Assembly: GCA_030390025.1 (NCBI GenBank)
Contig: CM059434.1
Span: 45,570,001 to 45,634,000 of the forward strand
Source: Squalus acanthias
Lineage: Eukaryota
Direction of reading: 5' to 3'
DNA length: 64,000 nt
The notes below the pieces were generated by a model, which ran no database searches, had not been told where the DNA came from, and worked only from the letters and a program-made list of their open reading frames with translations. Positions 3,975 through 39,123 of the stretch are shown piece by piece. Position 1 is the first letter of the stretch, and the number at the start of each line of letters is the position of its first letter. Both the position numbers and the translations under genes were made by a program.

Positions 3975-4496
3975 ATGATCTTTAGTATGCACCAGTCATG
4001 GCTGCAGTTCCTCCCCGAGGTTCCTTTTTTGAATCAGTTTCTGTATTACAAGGGGAAATTCCTGTTTCACATGATGAAGCTTCCTACTTGCAGTTTGGTC
4101 TTTGATCGAAGCAGTAGCATCGTACAGTAACCAAAACCACAGGCACTTGCTGATCAAGCCACCCTTCCTTCTGCATTCCAAAAATCAACCCCATGAAAAT
4201 CAAAGAAATCAACCTGAAAACCTACATGGTACTGACATAGAAAAGAGACTACTGCCCTCGCTGTCATTAAACAAAAGACGGAAATTCACCATATCCAATA
4301 GTGTTGCACCAACATTATATAAAAATACAAAATATTATGTTTTAGGGTTTTCTGTTAGATATACTATTTGGCTTAAGCGTCACTGATCAATTATGTCAGC
4401 TAACCGTGTCTCCCCGAGGAACCAGAGTTTGTGTTTATCTGCCCACTATTTATGCAAATATAGTGAGTCCCAGGGATTAAACCGAGAACGATTGCC

Positions 4497-12720: not shown

Positions 12721-13062
12721 AAGCCTTGGATGTGAACATATTTGCAAAACGAAAGAATGTCTTAGTGAATGAAGATGTTTCCCTGGAATGTAAAGTTACC
12801 GGCTATAGAACACCAACACTCGACTTAACAAATGTAGGTGTCCAGTGGTTGTTTGGGCCCAAAAAGGAAGAGATCTTTGTCTTTAATGGAGGACAACATT
12901 TACCAAAAAGACCTGGAGCAAAAATGTCTGAAACCGAATTACAGAAAGGAGATGCTTCACTTCATCTTCCAAATGTACAGTTTAATGAAGAAGGAGAATA
13001 CACTTGTATTGTAATTGTCACTCCTGATCAGGTAGCAAAGAGTTCAGAAATGCAGGTGTCAG
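12721..13062 (+). CDS. NCR3LG1-like: Exon: IgV domain (B7-H6-like)
   Basis: tttag|AAGCC...TCAG|gtaagt, 342 nt; [22 protein letters not shown]. Confidence 0.93.
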
Positions 13063-16000
13063 GTAAGTCTCCAGAATGTTAACTGTTGTTGATCTCTGTA
13101 TTAAGTTGTTGGGTTGGGGAAACACTAAGGTATAGTACATTTAAGCATAAAGGTGTACAATAAACATGCTCAAGGTGGAATAGGTGATTCATTGGGTTAG
13201 CACACTTATCTTTTCACCAGTGAAGTCTGGGTTCTAATGCAGCCCAGACTGATGGAATGAGATTCCGCTCTGTCTGCTAGCAGTATGTGTGAAATGAGTT
13301 TAAGCACTCTTAATTTTGGCACAGAATTGGCAATCTCACTCCCGAGACCAGCAGGAAGGCTGTGTGGGAAATTGGAAACTTACAATGGTGCAGTAGGGGT
13401 ACTTCTCTGAGGAGAAAGGTGAGGTACAGTGTTGGGGAAGAGTAGAAGAGTTTTAGTCGGTCACAAACACACCCAACGAATGAGAATACTCCCAACATTG
13501 AAATATATGATGGCTACATAAGCAGTGAAAAAATACAAATTATGTACACAATCCCAACAGAGTATCATTATAAAACATAATTTAAAAATTGCACAAAAAT
13601 GTTATATTAATATGGTAGATGTGCTACTGGAAATTTGAGGACTTTTAATACCATCACTCTGAACCCTTTGAGAGTGTATTATTTCCATAGCCCTTAGAAT
13701 TCTATGGTCTGTCAAGGCCAATTTCTGCAGCAATTCTAATCAAATTCAATGGCATGAGAATATTTCCTGGCCGATTTGTCCAGGGTTTAGAAAATCTCAA
13801 CACAATAAATATTTTTAAAATTTTGTGTATAAACAGTGCTAAAGTATTGTTCATGAATTTTAAATTGTTTAACTCCTTTGTAGCCTTACCCTTTCATATC
13901 TCTGTAACCTCCTCCATGCCTACAAACCCTGCCCCGAACACTCCGTTAATCTGACCATAGCCTCTTAAGTATCCTGCACTGCTCCATCCCGCCATTCCTT
14001 CAGCTACCTTGCCCTATGTTGTGGCAATTTTTTTCCTCAGCACCTTCCATCTCTCCACTTCCTTCTCATTCTTGAAGATCCTCCTTAAAACCTATGTCTT
14101 TGACCAAGCTTTTGGCCACCCCTCCAAATATCTCCTTCTTTGCCTTACCATTTTTTGAAACAAATTATGCCTCCTCTGAAGTGCCTTTGGAGGTTTTTCG
14201 ACATTGAAGGGAATATAAATACATTGTTGTTGTCCTTCACCTCTACCTCCTCTTCCTATTCCACCCCCCCTCTTTGCCTCCTCCCCCTCATCTCCCCCTT
14301 TCTCCTCGTCCCCCCCTTTTTCCTCGTCCCCCCCTTTCTCCTCGTCCCCCCCTTTCTCCTCCTCCCCCCCTTTTTCCTCGTCCCCCCCTTTCTCCTCGTC
14401 CCCCCCTTTCTCCTCCTCGTCCCCCCCTTTCTCCTCCTCGTCCCCCCCTTTCTCCTCCTCGTCCCCCCCTTTCTCCTCCTCGTCCCCCCCCTTTCTCCTC
14501 CTCGTCCCCCCCTTTCTCCTCCTCGTCCCCCCCTTTCTCCTCCTCGTCCCCCCCCCTTTCTCCTCCTCGTCCCCCCCTTTCTCCTCCTCGTCCCCCCCCT
14601 TTCTCTCCTCGTCCCCCCCTTTCTCCTCCTCGTCCCCCCTTTCTCCTCCTCGTCCCCCCCCTTTCTCCTCCTCGTCCCCCCCTTTCTCCTCGTCCCCCCT
14701 TTCTCCTCGGTCCCCCCCCTTTCTCCTCGCCCCCCTTCCTCCTCGTCCCCCCCCCTTTCTCCTCATCCCCCCCTTTCTCCTCCTCGTCCCCCCCTTTTCT
14801 CCTCCTCGTCCCCCCCCTTTCTCCTCGTCCCCCCCTTTCTCCTCATCCCCCCCCCTTTCTCCTCGTCCCCCCCCTTTCTCCTCGTCCCCCCCTTTTCTCC
14901 TCGTCCCCCCCTTCTTTTTCCTCGTCCCCCCCTTTCTCCTCGTCCCCCTTTTCCTCGTCCCCCCCTTTCTCCTCGTCCCCCCTTTTTCCTCGTCCCCCCC
15001 CTTTTTCCTACTAGTCCCCCCCTTTCTCCTCGTCCCCCCCTTTCTCCCGTCCCCCCCCCCTTTCTCCTCATCCCCCCCTTTCTACTCCTCGTCCCCCCCT
15101 TTCTCCTCCTCGTCCCCCCCCTTTTTCCTCGTCCCTCCCTTTTCCCTCGTCCCCCCCCTTTTTCCTCGCCCCCCCCCTTTCCTCCTCGCCCCCCCTTTCT
15201 CCTCATCCCCCCCTTTCTCCTCGCCTCCCCCTTTCTCCTCGTCCCCCCTTCTCCTCGTCCCCCCCTTTTCTCCTCATCCCCCCCTTTTCTCCTCGTCCCC
15301 CCCTTTCTCCTCATCCCCCCTTTCTCCTCGTCTCCCCCCTTTCTCCTCATCTCCACTCTTGTGTCCCACCCCAAGTATTTTGTTCCTCAATGGCTTCCTG
15401 TGCATTCCCTGCCCTCTCCATTCCACTGCTGGTAGCAGAGTGTTCTCTCTGCTTTTAAACACCTTCTCTAAACATATGTATTCCACCATGCTTTTAGTCA
15501 CCTCTTCTATTCCCTCCCCATCATTTGTGAAGCACCTTGAAACATTTTTGTACATTAAACATGCTATAAAAATGCTTGTTGATGTTGGAGGAATTTGGAA
15601 TGCTTCAATCTGAATTTGAGGTATTGGAGTAGTTACTTAATTCACTCCAGATAGAATTATCCACATCCTTGAAGAAACCGAGTAGTTTATTATATGAGAG
15701 AAATACCTGAAGGAAGGAAAGTGGTGCGCTTAGCATACGTTTACACAACAAAAATTTGATCTGGCTTTAGATGTTTATGGTAATGTGCCTTCAGCCTGTC
15801 TGACCAATTGTTACATTTATCTTCAACACAGCTCAACCAGTGGTCCATTTGTCCACACAACACATTACCATTTTGACTGGTTCAGAGGGGTCTGTGAGAT
15901 GTGACGTTACAGGATTTTATCCTTCGGAGCATGAGCTCATCTGGGAGAAGATATCAAAGGACAAAACTGTGACAATAATAACAGATATCTGCACTGGTGC

Positions 16001-19000
16001 CCCAATTTCCAACAGTGATGGAACCTTTAATGTTTCCAGTAGAATGAGAATTGAACCAACATTGGATGATGATGATAATAAGTACAGGTGTGTCATGAAG
16101 CACCGATCACTTCCTGGTAGTCGTTCACTGGAAACTGTGCTCACAGTGAAAGGTATGTCCTCTTCCTTGCGTAAGATGGGAATATTTTTCAGTGCGCTTT
16201 TGTTAAATCTTACAATTGTTTAAAATGACTTGTGCCCATTGTTTAACATTGAATTTCTACTGAGGTTTTCACCGAATTTAAATCAAGAATTCATCCTTTA
16301 TTACTCCACAATGAAAAGACATTAAGAACATAGATAGATTAATTGAATGGGCAAAACTGTGGCAAGTGGATTTCAATGTAGGCAAATGTGAGGTCATCCA
16401 CTTTCGACCTAAAAAGCATAGAACAGGGTACTTTCTAAATGGTGGTACCCTCAAAAAACTCGATTTTGTCAAACACAATTTCCCTTTCATAAAACTGTGT
16501 CTAATTGTATTGTGATTTTCCGAGTGACCTGTTACCACATTGTTAATAAGAGATTCTAGCTTTTTCCCTATTACTGATGTCAGGCTAACTGGCCTATAGT
16601 TCCCTGTTTTCTCTCCCTCCTTTCTTGAACAGCAGTGTTACATTTGCTACCTTCCAATCCACGGGGACCATTCCAGAATCGAGGGAATTCTGGAAGATCA
16701 AAACCAATGCATCCACTAACTTTGCAGCCACCTCTTTTAAAAAGGGCAGTAGGCCATTAAGTCCACGCGATTTGTCAGCTTTTAGTCCCATTAATTTTTC
16801 CAGTACTTTTTCTTTACCAATATTAATTTGAGTTCCTCACTCTCATTAGACCTTTGGTTCCCCACAATTTCTGTTATGTTCTTTGTTTCTTTACTGTAAA
16901 GATAGACACAAAATATTTGTTTAACGTCTCTGTCATTTCCTTATTCCCCATGAAATTTGTTTTGTCTCTGCCTCTAAGGGGCCCATGTTTACTTTCACTA
17001 ATCTCTTACTTTTTACATACTTGTAAAAGCTCTTACAATCTGTTTTTATATTTCTTGCTAGTTTACTCTCATTCTATTTTCTCCCTCTTGATCAATTTCT
17101 TAGTCATTTTTAAAACCCTCTCAATCCTCAGGCTTACTACTCTATTTCAATAATTCAACATGCAGGCACTATTAATATCTGTGCAGCACTCTGCTTAAAG
17201 TGTTGGAATTTGAATTGACAGCTGGGGCATCATGGGATTGTCACCTGTAGATTTTGTGATTATTCTCTTATTGCAACTGGAGATCTGTCCAAATCGATCA
17301 CTAGAACTCGATTCCACACTATTTAAGCAATTAAAAAGACAATTCTTATTAAAAGGGAGTTCAATTTGCCACGGGAAAACTACTGAGAGTTACCCCAATG
17401 ACATTCACTGTTTTATTGTTGAAAGTTGAAATCAGAGCTGATAACATGGCGGAAATACTGCTCAGAAACTATAAACCTTTAAGAAAAGGAAGCTATGAAG
17501 TGATTTAATAAAAGCTACAGTGAAATCAGTTACATTGTTGACTGGGCCTCTCTTCAGATGAGACTAGCTTCCTAGTCTATGCAGTGAAACTAAAGTAAAA
17601 ATAACTTGCATGAACTTTGTACTCCTATCACGCACTTAACCCCATGGAACTAATAACTAATCCCTTCACAGACCGACTCAACTCGATCTAAGCAAACTTC
17701 TGTGGGCAAACACCCTTGCCTGAATCCTCCCCTCCTCTGATTTTGAACTGTTGCTTGTGCCCTGCTTCCTCTGCTCCACCATGGGAGTGTTTATTCAGTC
17801 AAAATAACTTGAATTTTCTTCCCAAAATCATTCTGCCTTGCTAGTTCCTTCCATGTCTTTGAAGGCCTAATTTAAGAAAATCTTTCCGACCATGTCCTCT
17901 CCCTTATCCCTTTCCCCAATTTTTGCTTTTCATGCCTACTGCCGATCTTGGCCCCTTGTGAATGATCGTTTACATGAGAAGATCCATATAAATGCATTAT
18001 CAAAATCGCTGTCCTGTAGAACTGAACTGATCAGGATTTATTTTAGGTGAACTGCTGCAGATTGTAAAACATGTAACATTAATTATAAGCATATTTGCTG
18101 AGAAATTACACTATTTTCAGCGGAATTTCAGTGTATAATCAGGGTAGCCCTTCCTCTGATTTGCTCGCCGAGTGAGGTAATTTATATATATATTAAAATG
18201 AGGGTCAGTAAAGCTGCATCTCCGAGTTTCCTGCTTTTACACTCCGTGCATTTGGGATAAGTTAGAATGAGAATTATAAGGAATAGTTGTTTCCAGGATA
18301 AGCTGAGACAGGCAGAAGTGAGGAGTTTGTGAGTGTGAAGGTGTGGACAGTTTCAGTCGTGATTTTTGCAGCTATTTGTCTTTTTTTTGCCATTCTGCCG
18401 ACGCAGACCTGAACTTGCTTCTCGCTGCTTCTGACCGTGTGAGACCACCGGGACATTTAAAACCCCACCCCTCACCCAGAGCTAGGGCTTTTCAGGAGCT
18501 GATACGGCTTTTCCTATGGGATGTGCTTGTATGCCATTATCACGGAGTAGGATGAAACAAAGGAGAGTAAGGCAGCATTTGAGGAGGGTGGATCCCACCA
18601 GATATTACTCCCAGTAATCATCACCTGATTCCATAAGTCACACTAAATAAGTGCACTCCTTCCTGTCTAACTATAACCTCTATGAAGAACAAAGTACGAC
18701 GTAAGTGCACATTATATTTTAATGCAACAAAGTCCAAAGTGAACACAAACCAGTCTGCTCTTTCCTAACATTATGCTTCTTGGGTGTCTAAATATGCCTA
18801 TTTTTCTCTTATTCTAGTGCTTCTCCCAGGTGTAACATGAGGGTCAGTATCACAAGAGATAGTTAGCCGCTCATGTTCGACAAAAAGTGGTCCTCCAATC
18901 ATTGTCAGGTTGCTCCTGACAGGGGTCTGATGCTGGATACATCTATGGAGCTTGTTCCTGGGTAGCCTGGTGTCACCTTCTGTGTTCTGTTGGCCTGGTA

Positions 19001-22000
19001 TGTGCAGCTGTTCTGAGAGACAGCAAGATCATGCAGGTCAACTCCAGCCATTCCCATTCCACTAAGCCCTGGATCTGTCCCCACCTCCTCTCCCCCCGCC
19101 CCATGCTCAGGAAGTTGGTTTGCCGGGTGCTATCTATTCTCTTCACTATTGCTACCAGAGCTGTAGTCTGTGCTTCTGTGGAGGTGGAGACACTGACTGG
19201 TCCCTGGCCATTTCTTAGATGGGGGTCTGTTGCAGATTGCAGTGAAACTGCAACAAAGAAAAATACTTCCCTGATGTTGCCACAAGTGAGAGCTGTCGGC
19301 TCAAGTAACACTGTCAGTTGCTGCACATCCTTGGAGACTGACCTTGGAGCCTACACATAGGTACAATGTTCCTTGAACAACTTTATTTTCAGTTTAGCAT
19401 CCATGTGTTCTGGATCCCATGACTCCGAATTCATGGGCAGCCTTCTTGATCCTCTGCTGGGGAGTTGGCCATTCCTCATCCATATTCCCATTCATCCAGC
19501 TTCCTCGTGCTCTATGAATCACCTGGTCACTTCCTCATTAACACTATCTAATTCCTGTCTCCCCACCCACTCCCGTTAAATGTATCTGAGCTGGTGCATG
19601 AAAGTGAAAAAGCAAGTGACACAGGAGATGGGTTTGAGGAGGTTGTGGCAGCGGAAAGTGGGGCAGGAGGTCTCTGCAGGGATTCATAGGTGGACTTTTA
19701 TCCAAATTCATCATCCTCGTCATTTTCATCCTCATCATCAGAGTTCACAGGAAGTAGTTGAGTCTTTGTTCGTCATCACCATCCTCTTCCTTCTCTTCCT
19801 TGTCCTTGTCCTGTGCCCGCCATTGCTGTGATGAATCTGCAGGAATATAGGGAGCAAGCTAAGTGTGGGTGATCGTGTCCTTTGGGATTAAGGAGATAGA
19901 GTAGGACTGGAAGCTTGTGGCTGTATGGTGCTTCATATAGATGCCATGGTGACTGTGTCCGTATTCAGTCACTATTCATATTTGACCCTGAAATGACCTT
20001 CTGACCGACCACATATCCGCGCCATAACTAAGACCGCCTATTTCCACCTCCGTAACATCGCACGACTCCGCCCCGCCTCAGCTCATCTGCTGCTGAAACC
20101 CTCATCCATGCCTTTGTTACCTCTAGACTTAACTATTCAAATGCACTCCTGGCTGGCTTCCCACGTTCTACCCTACGTAAACTTGAGGTCATCCAAAACT
20201 CTGCTGCTCGTGTCCTAACATGCACCAAGTCCCGTTCACCCTTCACCCCTGTGCTCGCTGACCTACATTGGCTCCCAGATAAACAACGCCTCAATTTTCA
20301 AATTCTCATCCTTGTTTTCAAATCCCTCCATGGCCTTGCCCTTCCCTATCTCTGTAATCTCCTTCAGCCCCACAATCCCCCGAGATATCTACGCTGCTCT
20401 AATTCTGCCCTCTTGAGCATCCTCGATTTTAATCGCTCCACCATCAGTGGCCGTGCCTTCAGCTGCCAAGGCCCTAAGCTCTGGAATTCCCTGCCTAAAT
20501 CTCTCCGCCTCTCTACCTCTCTTTCCTCCTTTAAGATGCTCCTTAAAACCTACCTCTCGTCTGCCCTAATTTCTCCTTATGTGGCTCAGTGTCAAAGTTT
20601 GTCTTATAACGCTCCTGTGAAGCGCCTTGGGATGTTTTACTACGTTAAAGGCACTATATAAATACGAGTTGTTGTTGTTATTCAAGTGCCAACCTTTTGC
20701 CGTCAATCTTGCTGGTTCCCACAGGAAGAGCACCAAGCCACTCCATGTGCTGTATGGCTACAATCTCGTAGGGTGTGAGGTTTTCCAGGTTGAAGCTCCC
20801 CTCTCCTGCTGCCTGTCTCTCACTGGCATTGTGTGACATTTTCTCCTGCAAGCAGATTGAATAAATTAGGCGAAGGCTTGCAGTTGAGTGTACGCCAAGT
20901 GGCTTGAGAGACCATGTTGAAGTGCAGGAAAGGTTTTAAGATTGTGCATGTAATTAATGATCGCCAGTTACTGCTGTTCTTAATCAGGGTGCATAGTGAA
21001 AGGTTATTTGTACAGCTGTTACTTTTAGAGGGTTAAAAGTATACTGGTGTCCAGGGTGCCTAAGGAAGAAAGGGGAAAGTGGCTGGTGTGTTACCCTGCT
21101 TGCTCAAGTCAGGTCATTCAACTTTTTGTGGCACTGGCCAGTGCTGCCTCCCTCCACATGCCATGAGTGCCTTCATTGATATGTTTCCTGCCATGGACAC
21201 AAATCATTCTGTCTCTCCTGTGCTTTATTTAATTGAGGAGGGTTTGCAGGTTGGACTCAGCGAAACTGTGGCACCTTCTCTGCCTTGGTCTCATACCCTC
21301 CTTCTGCCTTTGGCTGCCTCTGCTGGGTTCTCCTGTGTTAAACATTCTTGTAAAGTGTCCCAAAAACAGTCAGGTGACATACAGTCAACTCACTAAGTCG
21401 AGCACTGTTCGTTACTTGCCTGCTGCTGCAATCTTCAGCCAGAACTGGCTTTTTAAAGGCTCTACTCTAATTTCCATGCAACACAGCATATTACTCCTGT
21501 TTTGCTCCTCTCTAATGCACATGCAAATGAGCTGACCCATGAAATTGTGGTGTAAATACCTCTCCAGGCCACCGGCAGCAGCAACTTATTTTTCATTGGT
21601 GCAAAAGGAGTGCAATTCACCGCATGAAATTTCTAGGCCATTACTTAGAGGGGACATTAACTGCACATAGTTTCAAATTCTTTAAATACTTTACTGTGTT
21701 TAAGTATCTTCATTTCTAATTTACAGAAATGGAGGAGCACCATAACAAACTCTGTGCAAGTGAAGCAGTTTATTTCTTGTTGCATGTTTTTTGTCTAAAT
21801 GCTTAATGTATTTATGTTTCAAATTTCAGAGCCTGTGAAATCTTCTGCCGCAGGTGCGGTTGCTGGAAGCATAATTGGTACATTGCTGTTCTGTGCACTA
21901 TTGTTTTTTGCTGGATTTTATGCTTACAGAAAATTAAAAAAAGGTAATGTGTTGACTGGTGAAACCCTTTTATTGTACAATAACTATGTGTGTATTTGTG

Positions 22001-28000: not shown

Positions 28001-31000
28001 AAACGGCGAGATGCCCTTTTTGTGAAGCTAAAGGCAACTCAGACAGCAACTTTTGGATTTTTGAGTTTAACCACGCCTCTACCCCTCACCTGAAGTTGCT
28101 GTACAATTTGAGCATAAATAACAGTGAGCGCCGTTAAACTCATTGTTATTTTGAGAGCAAAGTCTGGGCATAATCGACTAATGTGTTTAATTGTTCTGGT
28201 TTGATTTAAAAATGCATAAATTGTAATAATTTGTTAATTGGGAAATATTAATAATCTGAAACTAATATACAGATTTAAGTTGGTGACTAACAATTCTACT
28301 GGGCAGTTTCAGCATTGGCAAAGGTCTGTTCGTGAAGGCCCATGACCTGGAGTGATCCGATTGGAGACAAGGGGAATAAAGAAACCAAAATAAATTAAAT
28401 TGAAATCTTGCTCTCACCCAAAAATAAAATTACCTTGGTTGTTTTTTTGATATTTTAGCAAACTGAGAAAATCCGAGTTGATCTTTTTGCAGTCTGTGAA
28501 AAATAATCCATTTGGGGTACTTTTTTGGTCTGGAAGAGCAAACAATAAAACAAAAGCCCAGAATAACAGAACAATAATACGAAAGAAAAACCTTGCATTT
28601 ATAGAGTTCATTTCCTATCCTATTTAAGTCCATAAACACTTGATTGCTCATGAATTAGTTTTGAAGTGTAATCTTTGTTGTTTTGTAGGCAATTTGTGCA
28701 GAGCAGTGTCCCACAAACAGCAATGTGATGAGTGACCAGTTAATCTGTTTTTTTGGTGATTTTGTTTTGAGGGCGAAATGTTGGCCAGGACATCAGGAGA
28801 AGTCCTTGCTCTTTGGATAAGTGCAATGAGATCTTTAATGTCCACCTGAAGAGGTAGACAGGGCCCCTTTCAGTACTGCAGTGCTCTTTCAGTATTGTAC
28901 TGACCTGTCGGCGTAAATTATTTCCTCAACTCCTGGAATGCCGCGAGAACCCAGACCACCTTCAGTGGCAAGAGCAGTACTGCTGAACCAAGCTGAATAG
29001 AGTTGGAAAGGATTGTTTGCAGCTCCCTATTAGCTCATTGGGAAAATGCACCACCCGATTCGGGCCTGAGCCATAGAGAACTGTAAGGTTGCAAGTCTGA
29101 TCCCTGAGTTTGCTGATCTCCGCTAGGTGGAGTGGTACAATCTGCCTCGGCCCCCATGGACTAGCGAAGTGAAATGTCACTGTCAAATGACCCCTGTTGC
29201 AAAGTGTGTGTGGATGCTTATTCGGTGAATGCAGGATCAGGCTTGAATAGCCTCCCAGTACTCCGTTCAGTCTCTTGGCCACTTCCAAGAGATACTGGAG
29301 CATTGACTGCAGCCATGGCCTGTACCACAGTGTGAGGGAAGAAAGAGGGACAGAGAAAAAGGATAGTTATTCAAGAAATCAATGTTTAAAATTAATCAAG
29401 GCATACTAGACATTTTTTTTTAAATTGTGGTCTTTTCTCAGTTACACAATCTCTAACACTGTTTCTTTTGTACGAGTAGTGTCGATGCCAAAGGTAACAG
29501 AAATTAAAACCGATCCACTTTACCCAGAGGTGGGAAAACCTGTAACACTGTCCTGCAAAGCAAAGGGCTTCTTTCCAGAAGATCATCAAATATTCTGGTT
29601 CAAAGCGTTTCAGAAAACTGATGATGGAATTGAAACAGAAGAAATTGAATTTGATGAAGAAACTGGTTTGTACTCTCGATTCTCCAAAAGGACATTCATT
29701 CCAACTGATAAGGACCATGGACAAGAGTTCAAAATGCAAATCCTTCACTCTGAAACTTCAAACAAGCCTGTCTCATCCAGTCATTTTTTGAAAATAAAAG
29801 GTAAATATTGTTTCAACAAGAAGTGCAACTTCATAGTACCAATTATGGAATGTTGAAAAGATTGTTTTGTAAATGGACAGATTTAAGTGTTTCAAATTCA
29901 TTAAATTAACATTGTTTTTATTAATAGAGGCTGGTAGTCAGGTAGGACAAACACCACAGGCCTAAACTGATAGCATATTGGTGATTGTTGAGGATAAAAC
30001 ATTATTTTATTAACGCTGCATTGTGGCCATAAGTCCTTCAAACATTCAGTCTTTGTGTTTATGTTGAAGATGATGATAGCTTTGCCATTGGAAGCCCAGG
30101 CTTTAACTACCTCTTTTGGTGATCCACAATACCTTCAGTAACTGTGCCACCCCACTTACATTCCTTGTTTGCCTGTGACTCCAGAGTTCCTCTCAGTGGC
30201 TCCATTGGCCCTAAGTTGGTGGTATCCCAACATAGTTGTGATTATCAAATCAGCAGCATAAATGGTTTGTAAAGTAAAGAGTGTAAAAAATGTCATCACA
30301 ATCTTTGAAACAAAGGCCAGAATTTTTAAGTTTGGACCCGGGGGAGTGGGCAGTAAAGCGCTGGTAAACCTGGAACTTAAGGTTTTAACTCCACAGCGTG
30401 CATTTGGCATCATGGACAGGTTCCCCGCCTGGAAGTCAGCCTGATTGACAGGCTGGATTCCAGTCAGACGAGAAACGCTGGCGAAGAGGCTGCAACCACA
30501 GGTAGGTGCAAGCTCCGACCCCGGGTGAGGGGGGAGTGTCTGATCCCCGTCCCCGGGGGGTGGGGGGAAAGTCCAATCTCCGACCCAGGGGTTGTATGGG
30601 TGGGGGGCGGGGGGGGGGGGAGGTGATGGTGGGGGAGCTGGGGGCCGGGAGGATGCACTCCTGCTCCTCCCGGCCCACAAGAATTGCTCCCCAAGGCTGT
30701 CCTCTCCTCGCTGCAGCTGCCGGGAATCCCAAGGCCCGGGAACCCCAGCCAGCCACAGTTAAACAAGCATAGCAGGTTTAATCTGAGACTGCTAGCCTCA
30801 TTATATAAAGTGCCAACCTGCCTCCTGGGAGCGGGTTGGCTGCCCGCCACCACCCCCCTCCCCCCCCCCCCCCCCGTCCTCCCTCTGTTAAAACTGGAAG
30901 TGGGTGGGTTGGAGGCAGGTAGGGGTCGGGATTCAGGTTTTTAACACTTTAACCTGCCACCCGACCCCAACCCACCTGTGTTTTGGGGTTAATATTCCCC

Positions 31001-34000
31001 TCAAAGCCTAAGTTGCACAATGATAGATTTGATGGCTGCTGTCATCTTAAATATCCATCATTTGGGGAAAAAAAGACAGTTCTTTTTAACCTCCCTTTTT
31101 GATCCTTAACCATGAAGGTTATTCAGTATTGTAATCAACTGTGGTTTCATGCAATTTAAACAGGAATTCCATCTGTTGAAGACATCAAACTTGACCCACC
31201 AGAAGCTGCTATATATGGTACAGATCTTGCTCTCATCTGCAATATCAGTAACTTTTACCCACAAAATATCCGTGCATTTTGGATGCAAAAAGAAAAACCG
31301 ATAGTCAAAGGGATCACAACTAACGGACCTGAGAGGGAGGAAAATGGATGTTATCGGTTGTCTTCCCACTTGCAAGTAACACCAACTGCACTAGATTTTG
31401 ATCAGGATTTTTCCTTCCGTGTGGAGCATGATAATTTAAAGACTCCAATTGTAAAAAAGGCATATTTAACACTTCCAGGTATGTTTCATCCTGATCCTTC
31501 TCCCCTCCCACCACAGTTTGAAAAATTCCACTTTTATATTTAAATGTTTGGGATTATTTTGTGAAGGACGGAGGCAACCCATCGGCCCCTTTCTGGCTGG
31601 GATATCCAGGACCAAATCATCCGCCTGCGGTACCAGTGAGCACAACCCGAATTCCCCTTTCAACATTTGTCCCACACCTTACCTTCCCTCTGTTACTGAT
31701 CATCACAGCATCCCCTTGGCCACAATGCTGAAATAAAAGCCACCACAAAGCAAACTTTCCAATCCAACTTTATCCATATATGCATCCAATATTACATCAA
31801 AAAGAAGGTAGAGTGATGTGGATGTGATGAGTGGCACAGCAGGATGGGGTGTGGCTTTGCAGTAATGTTTCGTGATCCATTGCGATCATTGAAAGGTTTG
31901 TGCCACTGCTTGTGCTCCCCTGTGCAATGTGCAACCAGGCAGTATTGGTCTCCTGGGGAGGTCTCTTCCGCCCATTGGAAGGGAAGAGGACCTCCCCATG
32001 TGCTGTGACTCTCTCCATAAGCATATGGAGGGAGTCATGGGAGAGCCTGGGTGCAGCCGTGCCCCTCTGTGCAGTGCTTGTCAGTGTTTGCAGCACCTCA
32101 ATGCTGTAGAACACTGACAGCACAAATGTCAAAGTGAATTTGCGCATGGTCCCTTTAAGAAACCGGTTGATGACGCCTCATCAAATGATGTCATCAGACC
32201 CGCTTCCTTCAACTGGACCGGGAAACGCACTGGGCAGGCATAACAAGCCCAATCAGGGGAAAGTCATGTCGGAGGCCATGATGGAGCCAACAGTGAGGCC
32301 GCGACCCGCCACTGACCTTGCCCGCCACGGACCCGCTGAGGTAGGGAAAATCGTGGTCTGTGTTTCTATGATTTGTATGAGTGCTGAAGCACTTTTAGCA
32401 TTATTTATCTGAAGAAGGCAGCTCAGCTTTAAGTGCTGCAGACTGCTTTGAAGAGGAGCAGGCTAGCTTTTATGTAAATATGTGAGCTGTATATCTACAG
32501 AAAATATTCCAATAATTCTGATGACAGTAGTTTTGCAGAACAGGTTCATGAGATCTTAATTAATTTTCTCCATAAATAATTTGTGTATATTACAAACTAT
32601 ACAAGCACCCTTTCTTTTCTTTTTATTTTATTCACATTAAAACTTAATCAGTTTGCTTCAATGGCTAAACACTTATGTACTTTTTATTTGTTTTTTCAGC
32701 TTTGTCTCCTGCCTTGTCCGTTATTAAAGCTGATCCCGAACTGCCTGGCGTTAATCAGCTTACAAAACTCAGTATCTCATTGACAAGCTATGCTCCTGCT
32801 GAAGTCCAAGTAAAGTGGTTTAAAAATGGGATACCTTGTTCGGATGTGATTAACAGCCCTCCTGTGATTGCAGACGATGATCTCTTCTCGTCAGTTATAA
32901 GCACACAATTTGTTGCAACTGAAAATGATCATGATAGTTTCATCAGATGTGAGGTGCTTCACATAGCAACAAAGGAAATTCAAGAGAAAGATTTCAAATT
33001 GCTCCTTAAAGGTGAATGTTTTATTGGAGTCGGATTTAAAGCAAACCATTTCATTAAAATTGTTATAACTGCAATATTGATTGCTTTGATTTCAACAAAA
33101 CAGTAATTTGAATGTTTATTTCACATTGAGATTTTATATTGAATAAACAATTTTTTTTATTAATGCTGAGAATAGTTAATTTTGGGTGACTTCAGTTATT
33201 TTCAATACTATTAGATGAGTTAATTAATGCTCTTAACATTGGAAGTGCCTATTTAATTTGACTTATGTCAAATTTAACTCATTTGTTTTTCTGTTCAGAT
33301 TGTGCTGAAAATGAAGATGATGCGCTTTATAGCAACATAACAAAATATGAAGGTAAAGTGTTCATTTTGAGAGGTTCATGTTTGGTTGTAATCCATTGTG
33401 CTGTCAGTGTGGTATTTCAGATTATTTGTAGAATAACCCAGATATTCCTATTTAGGTGGGCAGGTGTGGGGTGCTGTATGCCAGCTGCCAGCCCACTTCT
33501 GTGCTCGCCCAATATTCTGACTTTATTTCTGGCTGTTGGCAGAATCACCCACCCTAAATGGGCTGTTAAAATGAGGCTGTGATGACATCATGGATTCCAT
33601 TCTCCATCATTACTGCCTTATTTACACTCAGTACACAATGGCTGTCTAGGGTTGCTAGATGCTGGGGAAAAGACAAACATGCATTTAAAGAGCCAAATAC
33701 AGATATAATTAAAGCTTTGAAAAATCCTTATTTCTTCAGTGATTTTGGATTTTTTTGCTGTTCCTAATGTTTTACTCTCTGCCATTTGCCGATTGTCGCC
33801 ATCTTCAGGCAAGACACAACGTAGGTTTCTAATTGGGGATTCCCCTCTACCTTTTGCTTCCTAGAAGAGGAGAGTAGGGAATCCAGGTTGGTGAGGCTGC
33901 ACTGGAAACCCATGAAATGTACCCACCAGTACCCCACACCTGACGATAGAGGAAGAGGTGACACTATCTGCATTTGCCCAAGGAAGAGAAGGAGCAGCAG

Positions 34001-37000: not shown

Positions 37001-39123
37001 GCCTTATCCGAGGAAGGATGTTCTTGCCATGGAGGGAGTGCAGCAAAGATTCACCAGACTGATACCTGGGATGGCAGGAATGACGTATGAAGAGAGATTG
37101 GGTCGATTAGGCTTATATTCGCTAGAGTTTAGAAGAATGAGAGGGGATTGCATTGAAACTTATAAAATTCTAACAGGACTAGACAAACTAGATGCAGGAA
37201 GGATGTTCCCGATGGCGGGGGAGTCCAGAACCAGGGGTCACAGTCTAAGGATAAGGACTAAGCCATTTAGGACTGAGATGAGGAGGAATTTCTTCACCCA
37301 GAGAGGGGTGAGCCTGTGGAATTCTCTACCACACAAGGCAGTGGAGGCCAATTCATTAAATATATTCAAGAAGGAGTTAGATATATTTCTTAAGGCTAAA
37401 GGGATCAAGGGATATGGGAAGAAAGCAGGGACAGGCTACTGAATTTGGATGATCAGCCATGATCTCATTAAATGGCGGAACAGGCTCGAGGGGCCGAATG
37501 GCCTACTCCTGCTCCTATCTTCTATGTTTCTTTTCTTTCTCATGGATATTGATGTTAGGGCTGTATTCCCTGGAATTTAGAAGATTAAGGGGTGATTTGA
37601 TTGAAGTTTTCAAAATATTAAGGGGAACGGATAGGGTAGATAAAGAGAAACTATTTCCGCTGGTTGGGGAATCTAAAAATTAGAGAAGGCCTTTCAGGAG
37701 TGAAGTTAGGAAACACTTCTCCACGCAAAGGGTGGTAGAAGTTTGGAACTCTCTTCTGCAAATGGCAGTTGATGCTCGATCAGTTGTTCATTTTAAATCT
37801 GAGATTAATAGATTTTTGCTAAGCAAAGATATTAAGGGATATGGGGCAAAGGCGGGTATATGGAGTTTGGTCACAGATCAACCATGATCACATTGAATGG
37901 CGGAAGAGGTTCAAGGGGCTAAATGGCCTACTCCTGTTGCTATGTTCCTATGGTAAGCTATTCAAGCACTTTAATACAGTTAGTGGAAGTGGTTATAAAG
38001 TGGTAGGCAAGCTTAGTAGAGGGCATTCTTGGCTGGCTTCTTGTAACTTACCTGACCTGGTGAGGTTATTAAACATTTTGTGGCATGGAGTGACTGTGTG
38101 CGAAATAGTTGAATTCATACTGACTGTCCTACTTATCTCCTGCGGCTCTCCTTTTGTCTGTTCCCAAAGGGTGCTATTTTCATAATTGTTTCAAATTTAA
38201 TAAATATCTCTGATATGGGAAACATTTTTTGCACATATGTGAATAAATTATACCAACAATATAACTTTTAACTATTTTTAAAATGTTACGGTATAGCACT
38301 GTAATCTCATACTTTCATAGTCCCCAATTTGAAAATCAGATTTCCTTCTTATTTCTGCATTCTTGAATATTTTACTTGCTTCCCTCTTCCATGGCCCCAT
38401 CTCCATTATCCCTTCAACTCCAAGTCTACTTAACAAAGACAGGAGGACGGCTGGATGGTCTCTGGCTGCTGCTATGGTCGTTGTTATTTTATTGGCCTCT
38501 CTTCTTGGACATCAAGGCTCGTGATTTATGGAGGGGCATCCGTGACTCTTGGTAAAATGGCTCATCTCTCGTAGAACATTCCATGGCCATGGTGTACGTC
38601 TCCTGATTCCAAGCTTTTAGGCAGGAAATGCCAATTGATGGCTGCGTTCAAATGTCAGAAGTAGCTGGGATTAAAATGAAATGTCCCTAGTCTAGGAGTG
38701 CAGAGCTCTGCTGCTGGAACCAGCAACTTTCCTTGTGCTTTCATTATAAAATCAAATCTATATTTTTGTCACATTATTAAGGGTTTTGCATTATTTATTT
38801 CAAATTTTATTCCAACAGATAATTCTCAGGAGATGTCGGACATAACTTGCCAAACAGAAAATCCTAAAGCTGACCAACCCGTAACTCTTTCCTGCACTGT
38901 TAAAGGAGTCGCCATAGCAGATGCTCACATCACCTGGTACAGAGAAGTTTACCCCATTGAAGATGTGAGCTGTATTGAAAACACAGCATTTGCAACTGGT
39001 AAAGGTTTCACCACTGCACTCACGTATATACCAAGGCAAGAAGATGACAATCGTCTGTTCCAAATTGATGTTACCACTGAGATGGACCCAGTTAGCAGAT
39101 ATTTCAACCTGAAATTAAGTTGA
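12721..39123 (+). CDS. NCR3LG1-like: B7-H6/NCR3LG1-like receptor gene (multi-exon span): IgV-IgC1-TM-(IgC1-like)x6-Tyr micro-exon-IgC1-like; leader exon not located; one exon frameshifted
   Basis: 11 coding exons, each with an AG acceptor; the first ten end in GT donors, all junctions phase 1. V and C1 motifs closely resemble B7-H6 (RPGA...GDASLxLP...GEYxCxVxVTP; GFYP...WEK...NxDGTFNV). Confidence 0.8.
13175..13320 (+). mobile_element. Decayed tRNA-derived SINE
   Basis: A/B-box-like TCATTGGGTTAGC...GGGTTCTAATGC. Confidence 0.4.
14260..15360. repeat. Polypyrimidine minisatellite (TTTCTCCTC(CTC)GTCCCCCCC)n
   Basis: Direct tandem unit of ~18-21 bp; the Pro-rich and GDEEK ORFs are repeat translations. 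Confidence 0.95.
15832..16152 (+). CDS. NCR3LG1-like: Exon: extracellular IgC1 domain
   Basis: cag|CTCAACCA...AAAG|gtatgt, 321 nt; [29 protein letters not shown]. Confidence 0.93.
16322..17150 (-). mobile_element. Rearranged CR1 ORF2 fragments (short + piece at ~16322-16447, then - strand)
   Basis: ORF 16594-16791 GLKADKS...[14 protein letters not shown] matches the CR1 ORF2 elsewhere in the window. Confidence 0.75.
19975..20680 (+). mobile_element. L2-like LINE 3' fragment
   Basis: LADLHWLP...[12 protein letters not shown]...GPKLWNSLP; (GTT)n tail. Confidence 0.85.
21830..21943 (+). CDS. NCR3LG1-like: Exon: transmembrane helix and basic stop-transfer
   Basis: tttcag|AGCCT...AAAG|gtaatg, 114 nt; [38 protein letters not shown]. 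Confidence 0.9.
22126..22857. mobile_element. MITE-like TIR element
   Basis: GGCCTGGAGTTTCCG...CGGAAACTCCTGCCC imperfect inverted termini. Confidence 0.6.
22876..23695 (-). mobile_element. Harbinger-like MITE, family A copy 1 (contains a Penelope tail at ~23104-23198)
   Basis: Perfect TIR GGCCCGTATTTTCCGATC / GATCGGAAAATACGGGCC; homologous to 24284-25032 and 39223-39901 in the opposite orientation. Confidence 0.85.
23811..24250 (+). pseudogene. Exon: first post-TM Ig C1-like domain, disrupted by a 1-nt frameshift
   Basis: ttag|CTACT...GGAG|gtaaat, 440 nt (3n+2). The first half ATPKI...[11 protein letters not shown]...ARTK stops at TAA 24002-04; the second half (...[13 protein letters not shown]...LTIEVQH...TLDVKG) is in another frame. 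Confidence 0.8.
24284..25032 (+). mobile_element. Harbinger-like MITE, family A copy 2
   Basis: Flanked by AAT/AAT duplication; colinear with 39223-39901. Confidence 0.85.
25256..25636 (+). CDS. Exon: post-TM IgC1-like domain 2 (both Cys)
   Basis: aag|TGCCA...AGAG|gtatgt, 381 nt; [20 protein letters not shown]. Confidence 0.88.
26094..26405 (+). CDS. Exon: post-TM IgC1 domain 3 (both Cys)
   Basis: ccag|CCACT...CTGG|gtaagt, 312 nt; [28 protein letters not shown]. Confidence 0.92.
26616..27468 (-). mobile_element. Harbinger-derived Myb/SANT element nested in a larger TIR element (~26478-28168)
   Basis: [15 protein letters not shown]...EVLFP / [28 protein letters not shown] split over two frames. 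Confidence 0.75.
28590..28995 (-). mobile_element. tRNA-derived SINE, decayed
   Basis: Reverse-strand similarity to the SINE at 35815-36003. Confidence 0.5.
29480..29800 (+). CDS. Exon: post-TM IgC1-like domain 4 (F-strand Cys lost)
   Basis: tag|TGTCG...AAAG|gtaaat, 321 nt; [22 protein letters not shown]. Confidence 0.88.
30314..31001. mobile_element. GC-rich MITE-like element
   Basis: GGCCAGAATTTTTAA...TTAATATTCCCC termini; abrupt GC-rich island in an AT-rich intron. Confidence 0.5.
31164..31478 (+). CDS. Exon: post-TM IgC1-like domain 5 (F-strand Cys lost)
   Basis: cag|GAATT...CCAG|gtatgt, 315 nt; [20 protein letters not shown]. Confidence 0.88.
31560..32358 (-). mobile_element. Harbinger-derived Myb/SANT element (same family as 10286-12006)
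   Basis: Very similar text to ~11430-11990; ORF 31797-32147 [12 protein letters not shown]...AWLHIAQ. Confidence 0.75.
32700..33011 (+). CDS. Exon: post-TM IgC1-like domain 6 (B-strand Cys lost)
   Basis: ttcag|CTTTG...AAAG|gtgaat, 312 nt; [24 protein letters not shown]. Confidence 0.88.
33299..33352 (+). CDS. Micro-exon: acidic tyrosine-motif linker [18 protein letters not shown]
   Basis: Polypyrimidine tract, ttcag|AT...GAAG|gtaaag, 54 nt, phase 1-1, open in frame. Confidence 0.75.
34078..34294. mobile_element. Short MITE (GGGGGNGAAATT family)
   Basis: GGGGGGAAATTCGGT...ACCGAATTTTGCCCCC inverted termini. Confidence 0.7.
35815..36003 (+). mobile_element. tRNA-derived SINE 5' part, interrupted by CR1
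   Basis: A-box TGGATCAGTGGT and B-box GGTTCAAGATCC. Confidence 0.6.
36004..37530 (+). mobile_element. 5'-truncated CR1 LINE with an uninterrupted 473-aa RT ORF
   Basis: [23 protein letters not shown]1 3'UTR and tail; start nearly identical to 63422-64000. Confidence 0.95.
37551..37952 (+). mobile_element. CR1 3' fragment (second subfamily)
   Basis: [20 protein letters not shown]; tail CTATGTTCCTATG. Confidence 0.85.
38819..39123 (+). CDS. Terminal exon: degenerate Ig domain 7 (F-strand Cys lost), stop TGA
   Basis: acag|ATAAT; [19 protein letters not shown], ...FNLKLS*. Confidence 0.82.

What the first reader, a model, noticed from the sequence alone, without database searches (positions are those of the whole stretch)
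12721..39123. B7-H6-like receptor whose apparent cytoplasmic tail is an array of seven Ig C1-like domains
Seen: IgV (12721) and IgC1 (15832) exons, then a TM exon ending YRKLKK (21830-21943) that has no stop codon and ends at a phase-1 donor. Seven more Ig exons and one micro-exon follow, all phase 1, ending at a single stop (39121-23), with no second TM or signal peptide. Known: V-C1-TM is the B7-H6/NCR3LG1 ectodomain plan (ligand of NKp30); C1-set domains are normally extracellular or luminal (Ig, TCR, MHC, tapasin, SIRP), while familiar cytosolic Ig domains are mostly I-set (titin-like). Inference: this is a type I immune-surface protein with a ~810-aa intracellular C1 scaffold, an architecture I do not recognise as characterised. 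Similar uncharacterised gene models may already exist in databases.
Basis: partly seen in the sequence, partly recalled or inferred. Interest (0 to 1): 0.92.

Follow-up and report, generated by a model that had tools for sequence, protein, structure and literature searches.

The report
Shark B7-H6 with intracellular Ig array
This is a shark's copy of the NK-cell ligand B7-H6, whose tail beyond the membrane-spanning segment is a chain of seven antibody-like domains; the design is conserved from sharks to alligators, but no paper I could read explains it.

Summary
On the + strand lie a V exon, a C1 exon, a 114-nt TM exon, seven Ig exons, one 54-nt micro-exon and a single stop. All are phase 1-1. 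In the window E4 is 440 nt and out of frame. Contigs of three related runs carry one extra A there.

Spliced contigs of a close relative join C1→TM, TM→E4, E4→E5, E5→E6 and E6→E7.

The gene is the orthologue of nurse-shark "B7H6" (1092 aa) and of reptile and axolotl "NCR3LG1". All share V-C1-TM-(Ig)n with no second TM.

Three sequence signatures place the array in the cytosol:
- Both canonical cysteines: 47% of domains after the TM, 92-98% before it.
- Sequon excess over shuffles: 1.11 after, 1.62 before.
- Sporadic cysteines: tenfold denser after.

Topology is inferred, not shown. TM-skipped isoforms exist in a paralogue. The 2012 B7H6 paper was not held, so prior description cannot be excluded. 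The scan noted similar genes elsewhere in this genome.

The parts
12721..13062 (+). IgV exon (342 nt, phase 1-1) of the B7-H6-type ectodomain
   Evidence: Pfam V-set 40 bits. Best PDB match is human NCR3LG1, E 4.6e-14. Splice sites. 76% identical to Pristiophorus P0170.
15832..16152 (+). IgC1 exon (321 nt) of the ectodomain
   Evidence: Pfam C1-set 35.6 bits. Best PDB match is human NCR3LG1, E 3.5e-13. Its last 30 letters before the shared AG are the loose end joined to the TM exon in X5.
21830..21943 (+). Transmembrane exon (114 nt, phase 1-1): uncharged core followed by RKLKK, no stop, GT donor
   Evidence: Sequence. Hydropathy 2.33. Joined to E4 at GT..AG in 2 contigs of X5. The TM is conserved in 18 of 18 orthologues, with a basic cluster after it.
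23811..24250 (+). E4, first post-TM Ig exon. It is 440 nt in the window, so out of frame (stop at 23999-24001). Related runs have one more A behind 23991.
   Evidence: table 4. hhalign of E4 against E5 gives probability 99.7%. The junction 24250→25256 is seen in X1 and X5.
25256..25636 (+). E5, C1-set exon with a long conserved insertion; both canonical Cys kept
   Evidence: Pfam 36.8 bits. Junctions to E4 and E6. Cys 18/18 at both positions.
26094..26405 (+). E6, the most canonical C1-set exon; both Cys kept
   Evidence: Pfam 72.1 bits. PDB matches are MHC-I alpha3/beta2m, IgA and SIRP. Junction to E5, and a loose end equal to the start of E7.
29480..29800 (+). E7, C1-set exon lacking the F-strand Cys
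   Evidence: Pfam 33.9 bits. Cys pattern. The X5 loose end matches 29480-29509.
31164..31478 (+). E8, C1-set exon lacking the F-strand Cys
   Evidence: Pfam 49.0 bits..
32700..33011 (+). E9, C1-set exon lacking the B-strand Cys
   Evidence: Pfam 31.6 bits..
33299..33352 (+). Acidic micro-exon (54 nt, phase 1-1) holding a Y-S-N-I motif
   Evidence: In 8 of 9 database selachian orthologues the matching linker is acidic and holds a Tyr, as Y-x-N-[IL] in 6 of them; S. canicula has none.
38819..39123 (+). E10, last Ig exon, ending in ...LKLS and stop TGA (39121-39123)
   Evidence: hhalign against E7 and E9 gives 99.4%. The same Y-x-L-K-L-x C-terminus occurs in shark, salamander, caecilian, frog, turtle and crocodilian proteins.

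Best explanation
The locus is the orthologue, in a squalomorph shark, of B7-H6/NCR3LG1, the ligand of the NK receptor NKp30.

Its mRNA encodes, in order:
- a leader (not found in the window);
- a B7-H6-type V domain and C1 domain;
- one stop-transfer transmembrane helix;
- directly afterwards, about 813 residues made of seven C1-derived Ig domains plus a short acidic, tyrosine-containing linker, ending at a conserved ...LKLS C-terminus.

The V-C1 part is displayed outside the cell. The seven-domain array most likely lies in the cytosol as a folded, largely disulfide-free rod. I infer that it serves as a scaffold or sensor that couples the inside of the cell to the display or signalling of the NKp30 ligand. 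The precedent is the butyrophilins, where a B7-related ectodomain carries a folded intracellular domain.

Shown here: the exon structure, the splice junctions from C1a to E7 in a close relative, orthology and conservation.
Inferred: cytosolic location and function.

Cassette splicing (dropping the TM exon or E4) probably gives minor variants.
For: Exons, phases and domains.

Splice junctions. X1 and X5 give spliced contigs, so they are RNA-like. The junctions are 21943→23811 (X5, 2 contigs), 24250→25256 (X1, X5) and 25636→26094 (X1, X5). Loose ends in X5 equal the end of C1a and the start of E7.

Identity of the gene.
- V and C1a best match human NCR3LG1.
- The gene is collinear with nurse-shark 'B7H6' P0169, at 34-63% identity per exon piece (34% over the TM exon), and with Pristiophorus P0170, at 46-80% (46% over the TM exon).
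- Reptile and axolotl proteins named NCR3LG1 have V-C1-TM-(4-7 Ig).

TM. An uncharged core of 19-30 residues, followed by 2-4 Lys/Arg, in 18 of 18 orthologues. None of the 18 aligned orthologues has a second TM beyond the leader region.

Constraint. Tail domains are as conserved as the ectodomain: within selachians 49-70% against 60-67%.

Cytosolic signatures.
1. Among 1608 C1-like domain hits in 220 fetched proteins, both canonical Cys are present in 220/224 domains before a C-terminal TM and in 172/186 before an internal TM, but in only 387/821 after an internal TM. In the window 5 of 7 tail domains lack one Cys.
2. N-glycosylation sequons, observed over shuffle-expected: 1.62 before the TM (142 proteins), 1.66 in Ig-chain-like controls (27 proteins), and 1.11 after the TM, where their density equals that of the reversed motif.
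3. Non-conserved Cys: 0.15 per 100 aa in the ectodomain against 1.50 per 100 aa in the tail, in 18 orthologues.
Against: - No direct evidence of topology.
- The TM→E4 joint rests on 2 short contigs with only 25 letters on the shorter side, from one run of a related species. Each junction comes from a separate contig, so no single molecule was seen from V to E10.
- The same run also joins the TM donor to 144 letters that are not in the window.
- TM-skipped models exist: RefSeq isoform X2 of a paralogue in Carcharodon and Cetorhinus, and a partial S. torazame model.
- E5 and E6 keep both Cys in 18/18 orthologues, which would also fit folding in the ER.
- The window's own E4 is out of frame.
- The compositional surveys count related proteins, not independent events.
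- Isoelectric point does not separate the two parts: median 5.63 against 5.83.
- The differences listed within E4-E6 are 20 non-synonymous to 2 synonymous. This is a partial list, and it is odd for a conserved scaffold.
Confidence: 0.7

Rival explanations
1. The TM exon is a cassette. The array works outside the cell in a secreted, TM-less V-C1-(Ig)7 protein, and TM-containing long mRNAs are a minor form or by-product. The membrane form would then use another exon after the TM.
For: - The TM exon is 114 nt and phase 1-1, so skipping it keeps the frame.
- TM-skipped RefSeq isoforms exist in a paralogue (P0194, P0198), as does a partial S. torazame model, P0017.
- One X5 contig joins the TM donor to sequence outside the window.
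- E5 and E6 keep both Cys in 18/18 orthologues.
Against: - The TM→E4 joint is seen in RNA-like contigs.
- The nurse-shark record named B7H6 and nearly every orthologue model examined include the TM together with the array; the exception among the orthologues is the partial S. torazame model P0017.
- A secreted Ig array should resemble other secreted ones, but the tail has lost the canonical pair in 53% of domains, shows no sequon excess, and carries ten times more sporadic Cys.
Confidence: 0.2
2. These are two adjacent genes, a short V-C1-TM gene and a separate multi-C1 gene, which only look continuous because all IgSF exons are phase 1.
For: Phase compatibility alone proves nothing. No leader exon was found for either part.
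Against: - The GT..AG joint 21943→23811 and the chain of junctions on both sides.
- No signal-peptide-like exon or second hydrophobic exon lies between.
- The same order is kept in proteins of more than 40 species, including records deposited as B7H6/NCR3LG1.
Confidence: 0.03
3. The copy in this window is a broken allele or a pseudogene. The 1-nt loss in E4 ends the frame 63 codons after the TM unless E4 is skipped. This can be true together with the best explanation for the gene family.
For: - E4 is 440 nt with a stop at 23999-24001.
- Three related runs have one more A there.
- An E4-skipping isoform exists in whale shark: P0172, 971 aa against 1118 aa.
Against: - All ten other coding exons are open, with intact splice sites.
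- A single-base miscount in an assembly is at least as likely.
- None of the four runs I laid fits as the window's own individual: X1, X5 and X9 contigs differ by about 2-5%, and the longest X12 piece by about 3%. So this could not be settled.
Confidence: 0.15

Closest known systems
Human B7-H6 (NCR3LG1), ligand of NKp30
   Same: It has a V plus C1 ectodomain followed by one TM. It is the best solved-structure match of both ectodomain exons (6yjp, 3pv6, 4zso; E 4.6e-14 and 3.5e-13).
   Different: The human tail is, from my recall and not tested here, a short non-Ig sequence of retroviral gag-like origin with signalling motifs. Here the tail is about 813 residues of seven Ig domains.
[quoted passage not shown]
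   Same: Same order, V-C1-TM-7 Ig, ending ...LKLT. It is collinear with every exon of the window at 34-63% identity per exon piece, the TM exon lowest at 34%.
   Different: It is from another order of sharks. Whether its authors discussed the tail I could not read.
Reptile and amphibian NCR3LG1 models (alligator, gharial, turtles, lizards, python, axolotl, frogs, caecilian)
   Same: V-C1, then an internal TM, then Ig domains. The same Y-x-L-K-L-x C-terminus occurs in many of them.
   Different: They have 3-8 post-TM domains instead of 7. The sharks' acidic Tyr linker is not shared.
Butyrophilins such as BTN3A1 (recalled)
   Same: A B7-related V-C ectodomain, one TM, and a folded beta-sandwich domain in the cytosol that senses an intracellular ligand. 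This is the nearest working precedent.
   Different: Their intracellular domain is B30.2/SPRY, not Ig. No SPRY hit was found in four full-length orthologues.
UrIg2 of elasmobranchs (PMC12227049; section 'UrIg2...' read)
   Same: A non-rearranging V followed by many C1-type domains, in sharks.
   Different: UrIg2 has a VJ-type V, nine nearly identical C domains and its TM at the C-terminal end, so all its domains are outside the cell. Here the TM follows the first C1 and the later domains are only 15-25% alike.
Cytosolic Ig domains of titin-type proteins (recalled)
   Same: Ig folds working in the reducing cytosol, mostly without the canonical disulfide.
   Different: Those are I-set domains in muscle and cytoskeletal proteins. 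Here the domains score best as C1-set and keep the C-x-V-x-H type F strand.

Membership tests
B7-H6 / NCR3LG1 | N-terminal V-set domain most similar to B7-H6 among B7 members | tested here: met
   Pfam V-set 40 bits. The top three PDB sequences are human NCR3LG1 (E about 5e-14); the next is CD276 at 3.7e-09.
B7-H6 / NCR3LG1 | Membrane-proximal C1-set domain | tested here: met
   Pfam C1-set 35.6 bits. The top PDB matches are human NCR3LG1, E 3.5e-13.
B7-H6 / NCR3LG1 | Single-pass type I membrane anchor after the C1 domain | tested here: met
   The TM exon 21830-21943 has an uncharged core and RKLKK. The same is found in 18/18 orthologues. The signal peptide is seen in orthologues only; the leader exon was not found in the window.
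B7-H6 / NCR3LG1 | Orthology to genes named B7H6/NCR3LG1 | tested here: met
   Collinear tblastn matches of P0169 (nurse shark B7H6) to every exon. A reptile NCR3LG1 query retrieves Heptranchias P0168, the shark orthologue second closest to the window, and coelacanth P0008. Synteny was not tested.
B7-H6 / NCR3LG1 | Binds NKp30 | not testable with these tools
   This needs a binding assay.
B7-H6 / NCR3LG1 | Mammalian-type non-Ig cytoplasmic tail | not tested
   The nature of the human tail is recalled. The solved chains cover the ectodomain only. The shark tail is Ig domains throughout.
Ig C1-set domain (PF07654) | Score above Pfam's gathering cut-off (21 bits) | tested here: met
   Met for C1a, E5, E6, E7, E8 and E9 (31.6-72.1 bits). 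E10 scores 17.0 bits and the E4 halves have no hit. E4 and E10 join the family by profile comparison, 99.7% and 99.4%.
Ig C1-set domain (PF07654) | Canonical B-F strand disulfide pair | tested here: not met
   In the window it is met in C1a, E5 and E6 only; E4, E7, E8, E9 and E10 lack one Cys. These are C1-derived domains that have lost the bond.
UrIg / UrIg2 | VJ-type V exon and TM at the C-terminal end | tested here: not met
   The TM follows the first C1. By eye I see no J-like G-x-G motif at the end of the V exon translation. The UrIg2 description is from PMC12227049.
Butyrophilin | Cytoplasmic B30.2 (PRY/SPRY) domain | tested here: not met
   No SPRY family appears among the Pfam hits of four full-length orthologues or of the window's exons.

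The most novel reading that the evidence does not exclude
The ancestral B7-H6 of jawed vertebrates was an inside-out sensor. In this reading a cytosolic rod of seven disulfide-free, C1-derived Ig domains binds intracellular ligands such as stress, viral or cytoskeletal factors. It thereby controls the display, clustering or signalling of the NKp30 ligand at the surface, much as the B30.2 domain does for butyrophilins. Mammals later replaced this array with an unrelated tail. This would be the first C1-set Ig array that works in the cytosol.
Probability: 0.2. Interest if true: 0.9.

Novelty: new variant of a known kind. Interest (0 to 1): 0.68.

Why it matters
B7-H6/NKp30 is a central axis of tumour and stress recognition by NK cells. 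Its evolution has been followed back to sharks.

If the long tail is cytosolic, then outside mammals the ligand carries about 800 residues of folded Ig domains inside the cell. C1-set domains are otherwise known only outside the cell or in the ER lumen. This points to an unstudied intracellular function of the ligand, such as sensing, scaffolding or reverse signalling. It also dates the loss of that function to the mammalian line.

The claim is directly testable with tagged constructs. The gene and many orthologous models are already public. What this work adds is the evidence that the tail sits in a reducing, non-glycosylating compartment.

Tried and rejected
Steps that led nowhere:
- Leader exon. 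A short-word tblastn of seven orthologue N-termini gave only chance-level matches upstream of 12721. The best candidate, near 4084-4107, has stops and no start codon.
- The 144-letter sequence joined to the TM donor in X5. It has no match in the window at up to 3 mismatches, so its origin stays open.
- Exon-sized protein search with C1a, meant to catch transcript fragments that run into the next exon. No candidate was found in the allowed length range.
- Positionally conserved N-glycosylation sites. No alignment column reaches 8 of 18 orthologues in either part of the protein, so only densities could be compared.
- Isoelectric point. The two parts do not differ: median 5.63 against 5.83.
As a substitute I used per-domain protein identity and a partial count of listed differences. 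The latter rests on 40 of 127 differences and is only a lead.
- Literature. Six full-text searches and passages of PMC12227049, PMC3964593, PMC10751288, PMC6514059, PMC12619710 and PMC11599192 gave no description of a post-TM Ig array. Flajnik et al. 2012 and Ohta & Flajnik 2015 were not held.

Rejected reading: that the holes in X1 over the TM exon show TM skipping. The TM exon is the least conserved exon (X9 differs at 11 of 114 places). Short contigs may therefore fall under the 95% threshold, and the tool itself warns that a hole proves nothing.

Full report
WHAT IS THERE. The + strand between 12721 and 39123 holds eleven coding exons with AG/GT borders, all in phase 1-1.

| Exon | Coordinates | Length (nt) |
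|---|---|---|
| V | 12721-13062 | 342 |
| C1a | 15832-16152 | 321 |
| TM | 21830-21943 | 114 |
| E4 | 23811-24250 | 440 |
| E5 | 25256-25636 | 381 |
| E6 | 26094-26405 | 312 |
| E7 | 29480-29800 | 321 |
| E8 | 31164-31478 | 315 |
| E9 | 32700-33011 | 312 |
| micro-exon | 33299-33352 | 54 |
| E10 | 38819-39123 | 305, with the stop |

The stop is TGA at 39121-39123.

Each exon was translated and scanned on its own against Pfam. V is V-set (40 bits). C1a, E5, E6, E7, E8 and E9 are C1-set above the 21-bit cut-off (35.6, 36.8, 72.1, 33.9, 49.0 and 31.6 bits). E10 scores 17 bits, and the two halves of E4 give no Ig hit. Profiles cut from a 35-protein orthologue alignment show that E4 is homologous to E5 (hhalign probability 99.7%, E 2.8e-27) and E10 to E7 and E9 (99.4%). 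All seven modules after the TM are therefore Ig domains. They are old: identities to C1a are 15-25%.

The TM exon encodes an uncharged stretch followed by RKLKK and ends at AAAAAAG|gtaatg. No other hydrophobic stretch lies in an exon frame.

First, E4 is one base short of a multiple of three in the window and reaches a stop at 23999-24001. Second, the leader exon was not found; the window has a 500-N gap at 1487-1986.

All searches with window sequence were exon by exon.

TRANSCRIPTS. No listed run is on record as RNA. I laid four runs from four studies on 21700-27699. X9 and X12 give contigs that run through intron-exon borders, so they are DNA-like. X1 and X5 give spliced contigs, so they are RNA-like. 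X1, X5 and X9 contigs differ from the window by about 2-5%, so they come from relatives and not from the sequenced animal.

The GT..AG joints seen are:
- 21943→23811, TM to E4: X5, 2 contigs, 25 letters on the shorter side.
- 24250→25256, E4 to E5: X1 and X5, one contig each.
- 25636→26094, E5 to E6: X1 one contig, X5 two.

In X5 a contig that enters the TM exon carries 255 loose letters upstream. The 30 shown are exactly window 16121-16150, the end of C1a. A contig that leaves E6 carries letters that match 29480-29509, the start of E7, with one mismatch. So C1a→TM→E4→E5→E6→E7 is supported junction by junction, though not on a single molecule.

In the same table, contigs of X1, X5 and X9 have an extra A behind 23991, which makes E4 a multiple of three. 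One X5 contig joins the TM donor to 144 letters that occur nowhere in the window. This is either an alternative exon beyond the window or a paralogue's transcript.

WHAT GENE IT IS. A phmmer search with E6 against 1.84 billion representative proteins gave 2159 hits at E≤0.001 and 74 at E≤1e-30. The top of the list is dominated by proteins of 900-1200 aa with 6-10 matched stretches.

Their sequences and a hydropathy scan show signal peptide, V, C1, a TM at about residue 250-295, then Ig domains to the C-terminus, with no second TM. This holds for Callorhinchus, Narcine, Latimeria, Erpetoichthys, two Protopterus genes, Lissotriton, Cetorhinus and about twenty more chondrichthyans.

Most records are named 'uncharacterized protein'. 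The exceptions matter:
- P0191 is NCR3LG1 of the axolotl.
- Proteins named NCR3LG1 in alligators, gharial, turtles, lizards and python have the same plan, with 4-6 post-TM domains.

Many of these, from shark to alligator, end in the same Y-x-L-K-L-x C-terminus.

tblastn of twelve orthologues against the window is collinear, exon for exon. The closest is the sawshark Pristiophorus: V 76%, C1a 64%, E5 78%, E6 80%, E7 75%, E8 64%, E9 64%, E10 66%. The window is therefore from a squalomorph shark.

Against solved structures, the V and C1a exons each match human NCR3LG1 best (E 4.6e-14 and 3.5e-13). E6 matches MHC class I alpha3/beta2m, IgA and SIRP C1 domains.

No mammal, bird or teleost turned up among the names I looked up. 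The length window of the searches and the small number of names read mean this is not evidence of absence.

IS THE ARRAY INSIDE THE CELL? With a cleavable leader and one TM, whatever follows the TM is cytosolic. In 18 of 18 aligned orthologues the uncharged core is 19-30 residues and is followed at once by 2-4 Lys/Arg, while the upstream flank is the acidic K-E-P-E type. This fits N-out, C-in.

I then asked whether the sequences themselves differ on the two sides of the TM. Three tests gave a contrast.

1. Canonical disulfide. In the 18 orthologues both Cys are present 18/18 in V, C1a, E5 and E6. E7 and E8 keep only the B-strand Cys, E9 keeps only the F-strand Cys, and E4 has no conserved pair. 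The single survivors are themselves conserved in 17-18 of 18, so conservation of a Cys here does not prove a disulfide.

I widened this to all 220 proteins then fetched, using an HMM of the family's C1-like domains. It gave 1608 domain hits, of which 87 with a gap at either position were set aside.

| Position of the domain | Domains with both Cys |
|---|---|
| Before a C-terminal TM (Ig-heavy-chain-like proteins) | 220/224 |
| Before an internal TM | 172/186 |
| After an internal TM | 387/821 |
| Proteins with no TM | 124/191 |
| Proteins with two TMs | 85/94 |
| Proteins with three TMs | 4/4 |
| Overlapping a TM | 1/1 |

2. N-glycosylation sequons. In 142 proteins with an internal TM, the pre-TM part has 1.16 per 100 aa, which is 1.62 times the shuffle expectation. 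In 27 Ig-chain-like proteins the figures are 1.43 and 1.66. The post-TM part has 0.63 per 100 aa, 1.11 times expectation, and exactly the density of the reversed motif.

3. Cysteines in non-conserved columns. There are 6 in 4012 ectodomain residues (0.15 per 100 aa) against 221 in 14758 tail residues (1.50 per 100 aa).

Secreted Ig domains keep their disulfide, gain sequons and avoid stray thiols. The tail does none of these.

These counts are of related proteins, not independent events, and they are indirect. Taken together they make a reducing, non-glycosylating compartment the best reading.

The tail is not decaying. Per-domain identity within selachians is 49-70% for E4-E10 against 60-67% for V and C1a, and the same parity holds between chondrichthyans and bony vertebrates.

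THE LINKER. The micro-exon encodes an acidic stretch with a Y-S-N-I motif. In 8 of 9 database selachian orthologues the matching linker is acidic and holds a Tyr. It reads Y-x-N-[IL] in 6 of them. Rays, chimaera and bony vertebrates differ. From general knowledge, such a motif fits SH2-binding or Y-x-x-hydrophobic sorting signals in a cytosolic tail. An acidic Tyr could equally be a sulfation site in the secretory pathway, so I do not count it as evidence.

RIVALS. The serious rival is that the TM exon is a cassette and the array works in a secreted TM-less protein.
- For it: the exon is symmetric. RefSeq lists TM-skipped isoforms X2 of a paralogue in two lamniform sharks. One partial catshark model lacks the TM. 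E5 and E6 keep both Cys.
- Against it: the TM→E4 joint, the TM in nearly every orthologue model examined (the partial catshark model is the exception), and the three signatures above, which a secreted array should not show.
- I put it at 0.2.

Two separate genes is at 0.03. That this window's copy is a broken allele is at 0.15 and does not conflict with the main reading. Whale shark has an E4-skipping isoform (P0172), which would keep the frame.

WHAT IS KNOWN. The gene is public: nurse-shark B7H6 and dozens of RefSeq models. In six full-text searches and in the passages I read, no paper describes Ig domains after the TM of B7-H6.

The 2025 UrIg2 paper (PMC12227049; I read the outline, the section on UrIg2 and passages of its reference list) describes a different shark gene. 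That gene has a VJ-type V, nine C1 domains and the TM at the end.

The paper that reported shark B7H6 (Flajnik et al. 2012) and the 2015 review by Ohta and Flajnik were not held. I know the former's abstract only from memory, and I do not recall that it mentions the tail. Supplements were closed. So the architecture may have been remarked on in print, but I found no functional study of it.

The scan's own notes list similar genes elsewhere in this genome, including one 16 kb after and one 124 kb before this window. I did not test them. They fit the clustered paralogues suggested by the neighbouring LOC numbers in other sharks.

NOT DONE. There is therefore no model of the array and no codon-level test of selection. 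Of the differences that one search lists inside E4-E6, 20 change the residue and 2 do not. In the TM exon the split is 4 against 7. Only 40 of 127 differences were shown, so this is a lead to follow, not a result.

VERDICT. The locus is a shark B7-H6/NCR3LG1 orthologue whose conserved tail of seven C1-derived Ig domains most likely lies in the cytosol (0.7). It is a variant architecture of a known family, already present in databases, seemingly unstudied, and directly testable.

Noticed in passing
window 21943 (donor of the TM exon), run X5: One RNA-like contig joins the TM donor to 144 letters that have no match in the window at up to 3 mismatches. This is either an alternative exon beyond the window or a paralogue's transcript.
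   Followed up: partly
window 23913-26253 (E4-E6): Of the differences from related-species contigs that were listed inside these exons, 20 change the amino acid and 2 do not. In the TM exon the split is 4 against 7. Several cluster in the long loop of E5. The list is partial: 40 of 127 differences were shown.
   Followed up: partly
window 24281-25032 (intron between E4 and E5): A DNA-like contig of run X9 skips 752 bases here (24280→25033). The repeat-rich insert is therefore absent in that relative. Depth in the flanking bins is extreme, as expected for dispersed repeats. The scan's note s1-890014 calls this an inverted MITE pair.
   Followed up: no
window 14092-15435 (intron between V and C1a): A long low-complexity tract. 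One strand reads as Pro/Leu/Ser/Phe-rich open frames of 246-431 aa and the other as Gly/Glu/Lys/Arg-rich frames. GC skew is -0.63.
   Followed up: no
window 36021-37442 (+) and 61861-62907 (+): There is an open frame of 473 aa with reverse-transcriptase-like motifs, inside the intron before E10. A second open frame of 349 aa looks like a retroelement endonuclease part. I judged both by eye from the translations, with no family search.
   Followed up: no
orthologue proteins P0230, P0235-P0240, P0038, P0191, P0023, P0169, P0170: The C-terminus Y-x-L-K-L-x is kept from sharks to crocodilians, and the protein ends exactly with the last Ig strand. A conserved free C-terminus could be a binding site.
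   Followed up: no
proteins P0196, P0197, P0200-P0202, P0205, P0210, P0211: Other shark paralogues have the same V-C1-TM head but other tails: 1500-1730 aa with non-Ig Pfam families on record, or repeats that earned the name 'ribosome-binding protein 1-like'. The scan also notes a B7-H6-like/NLR fusion in this genome.
   Followed up: no
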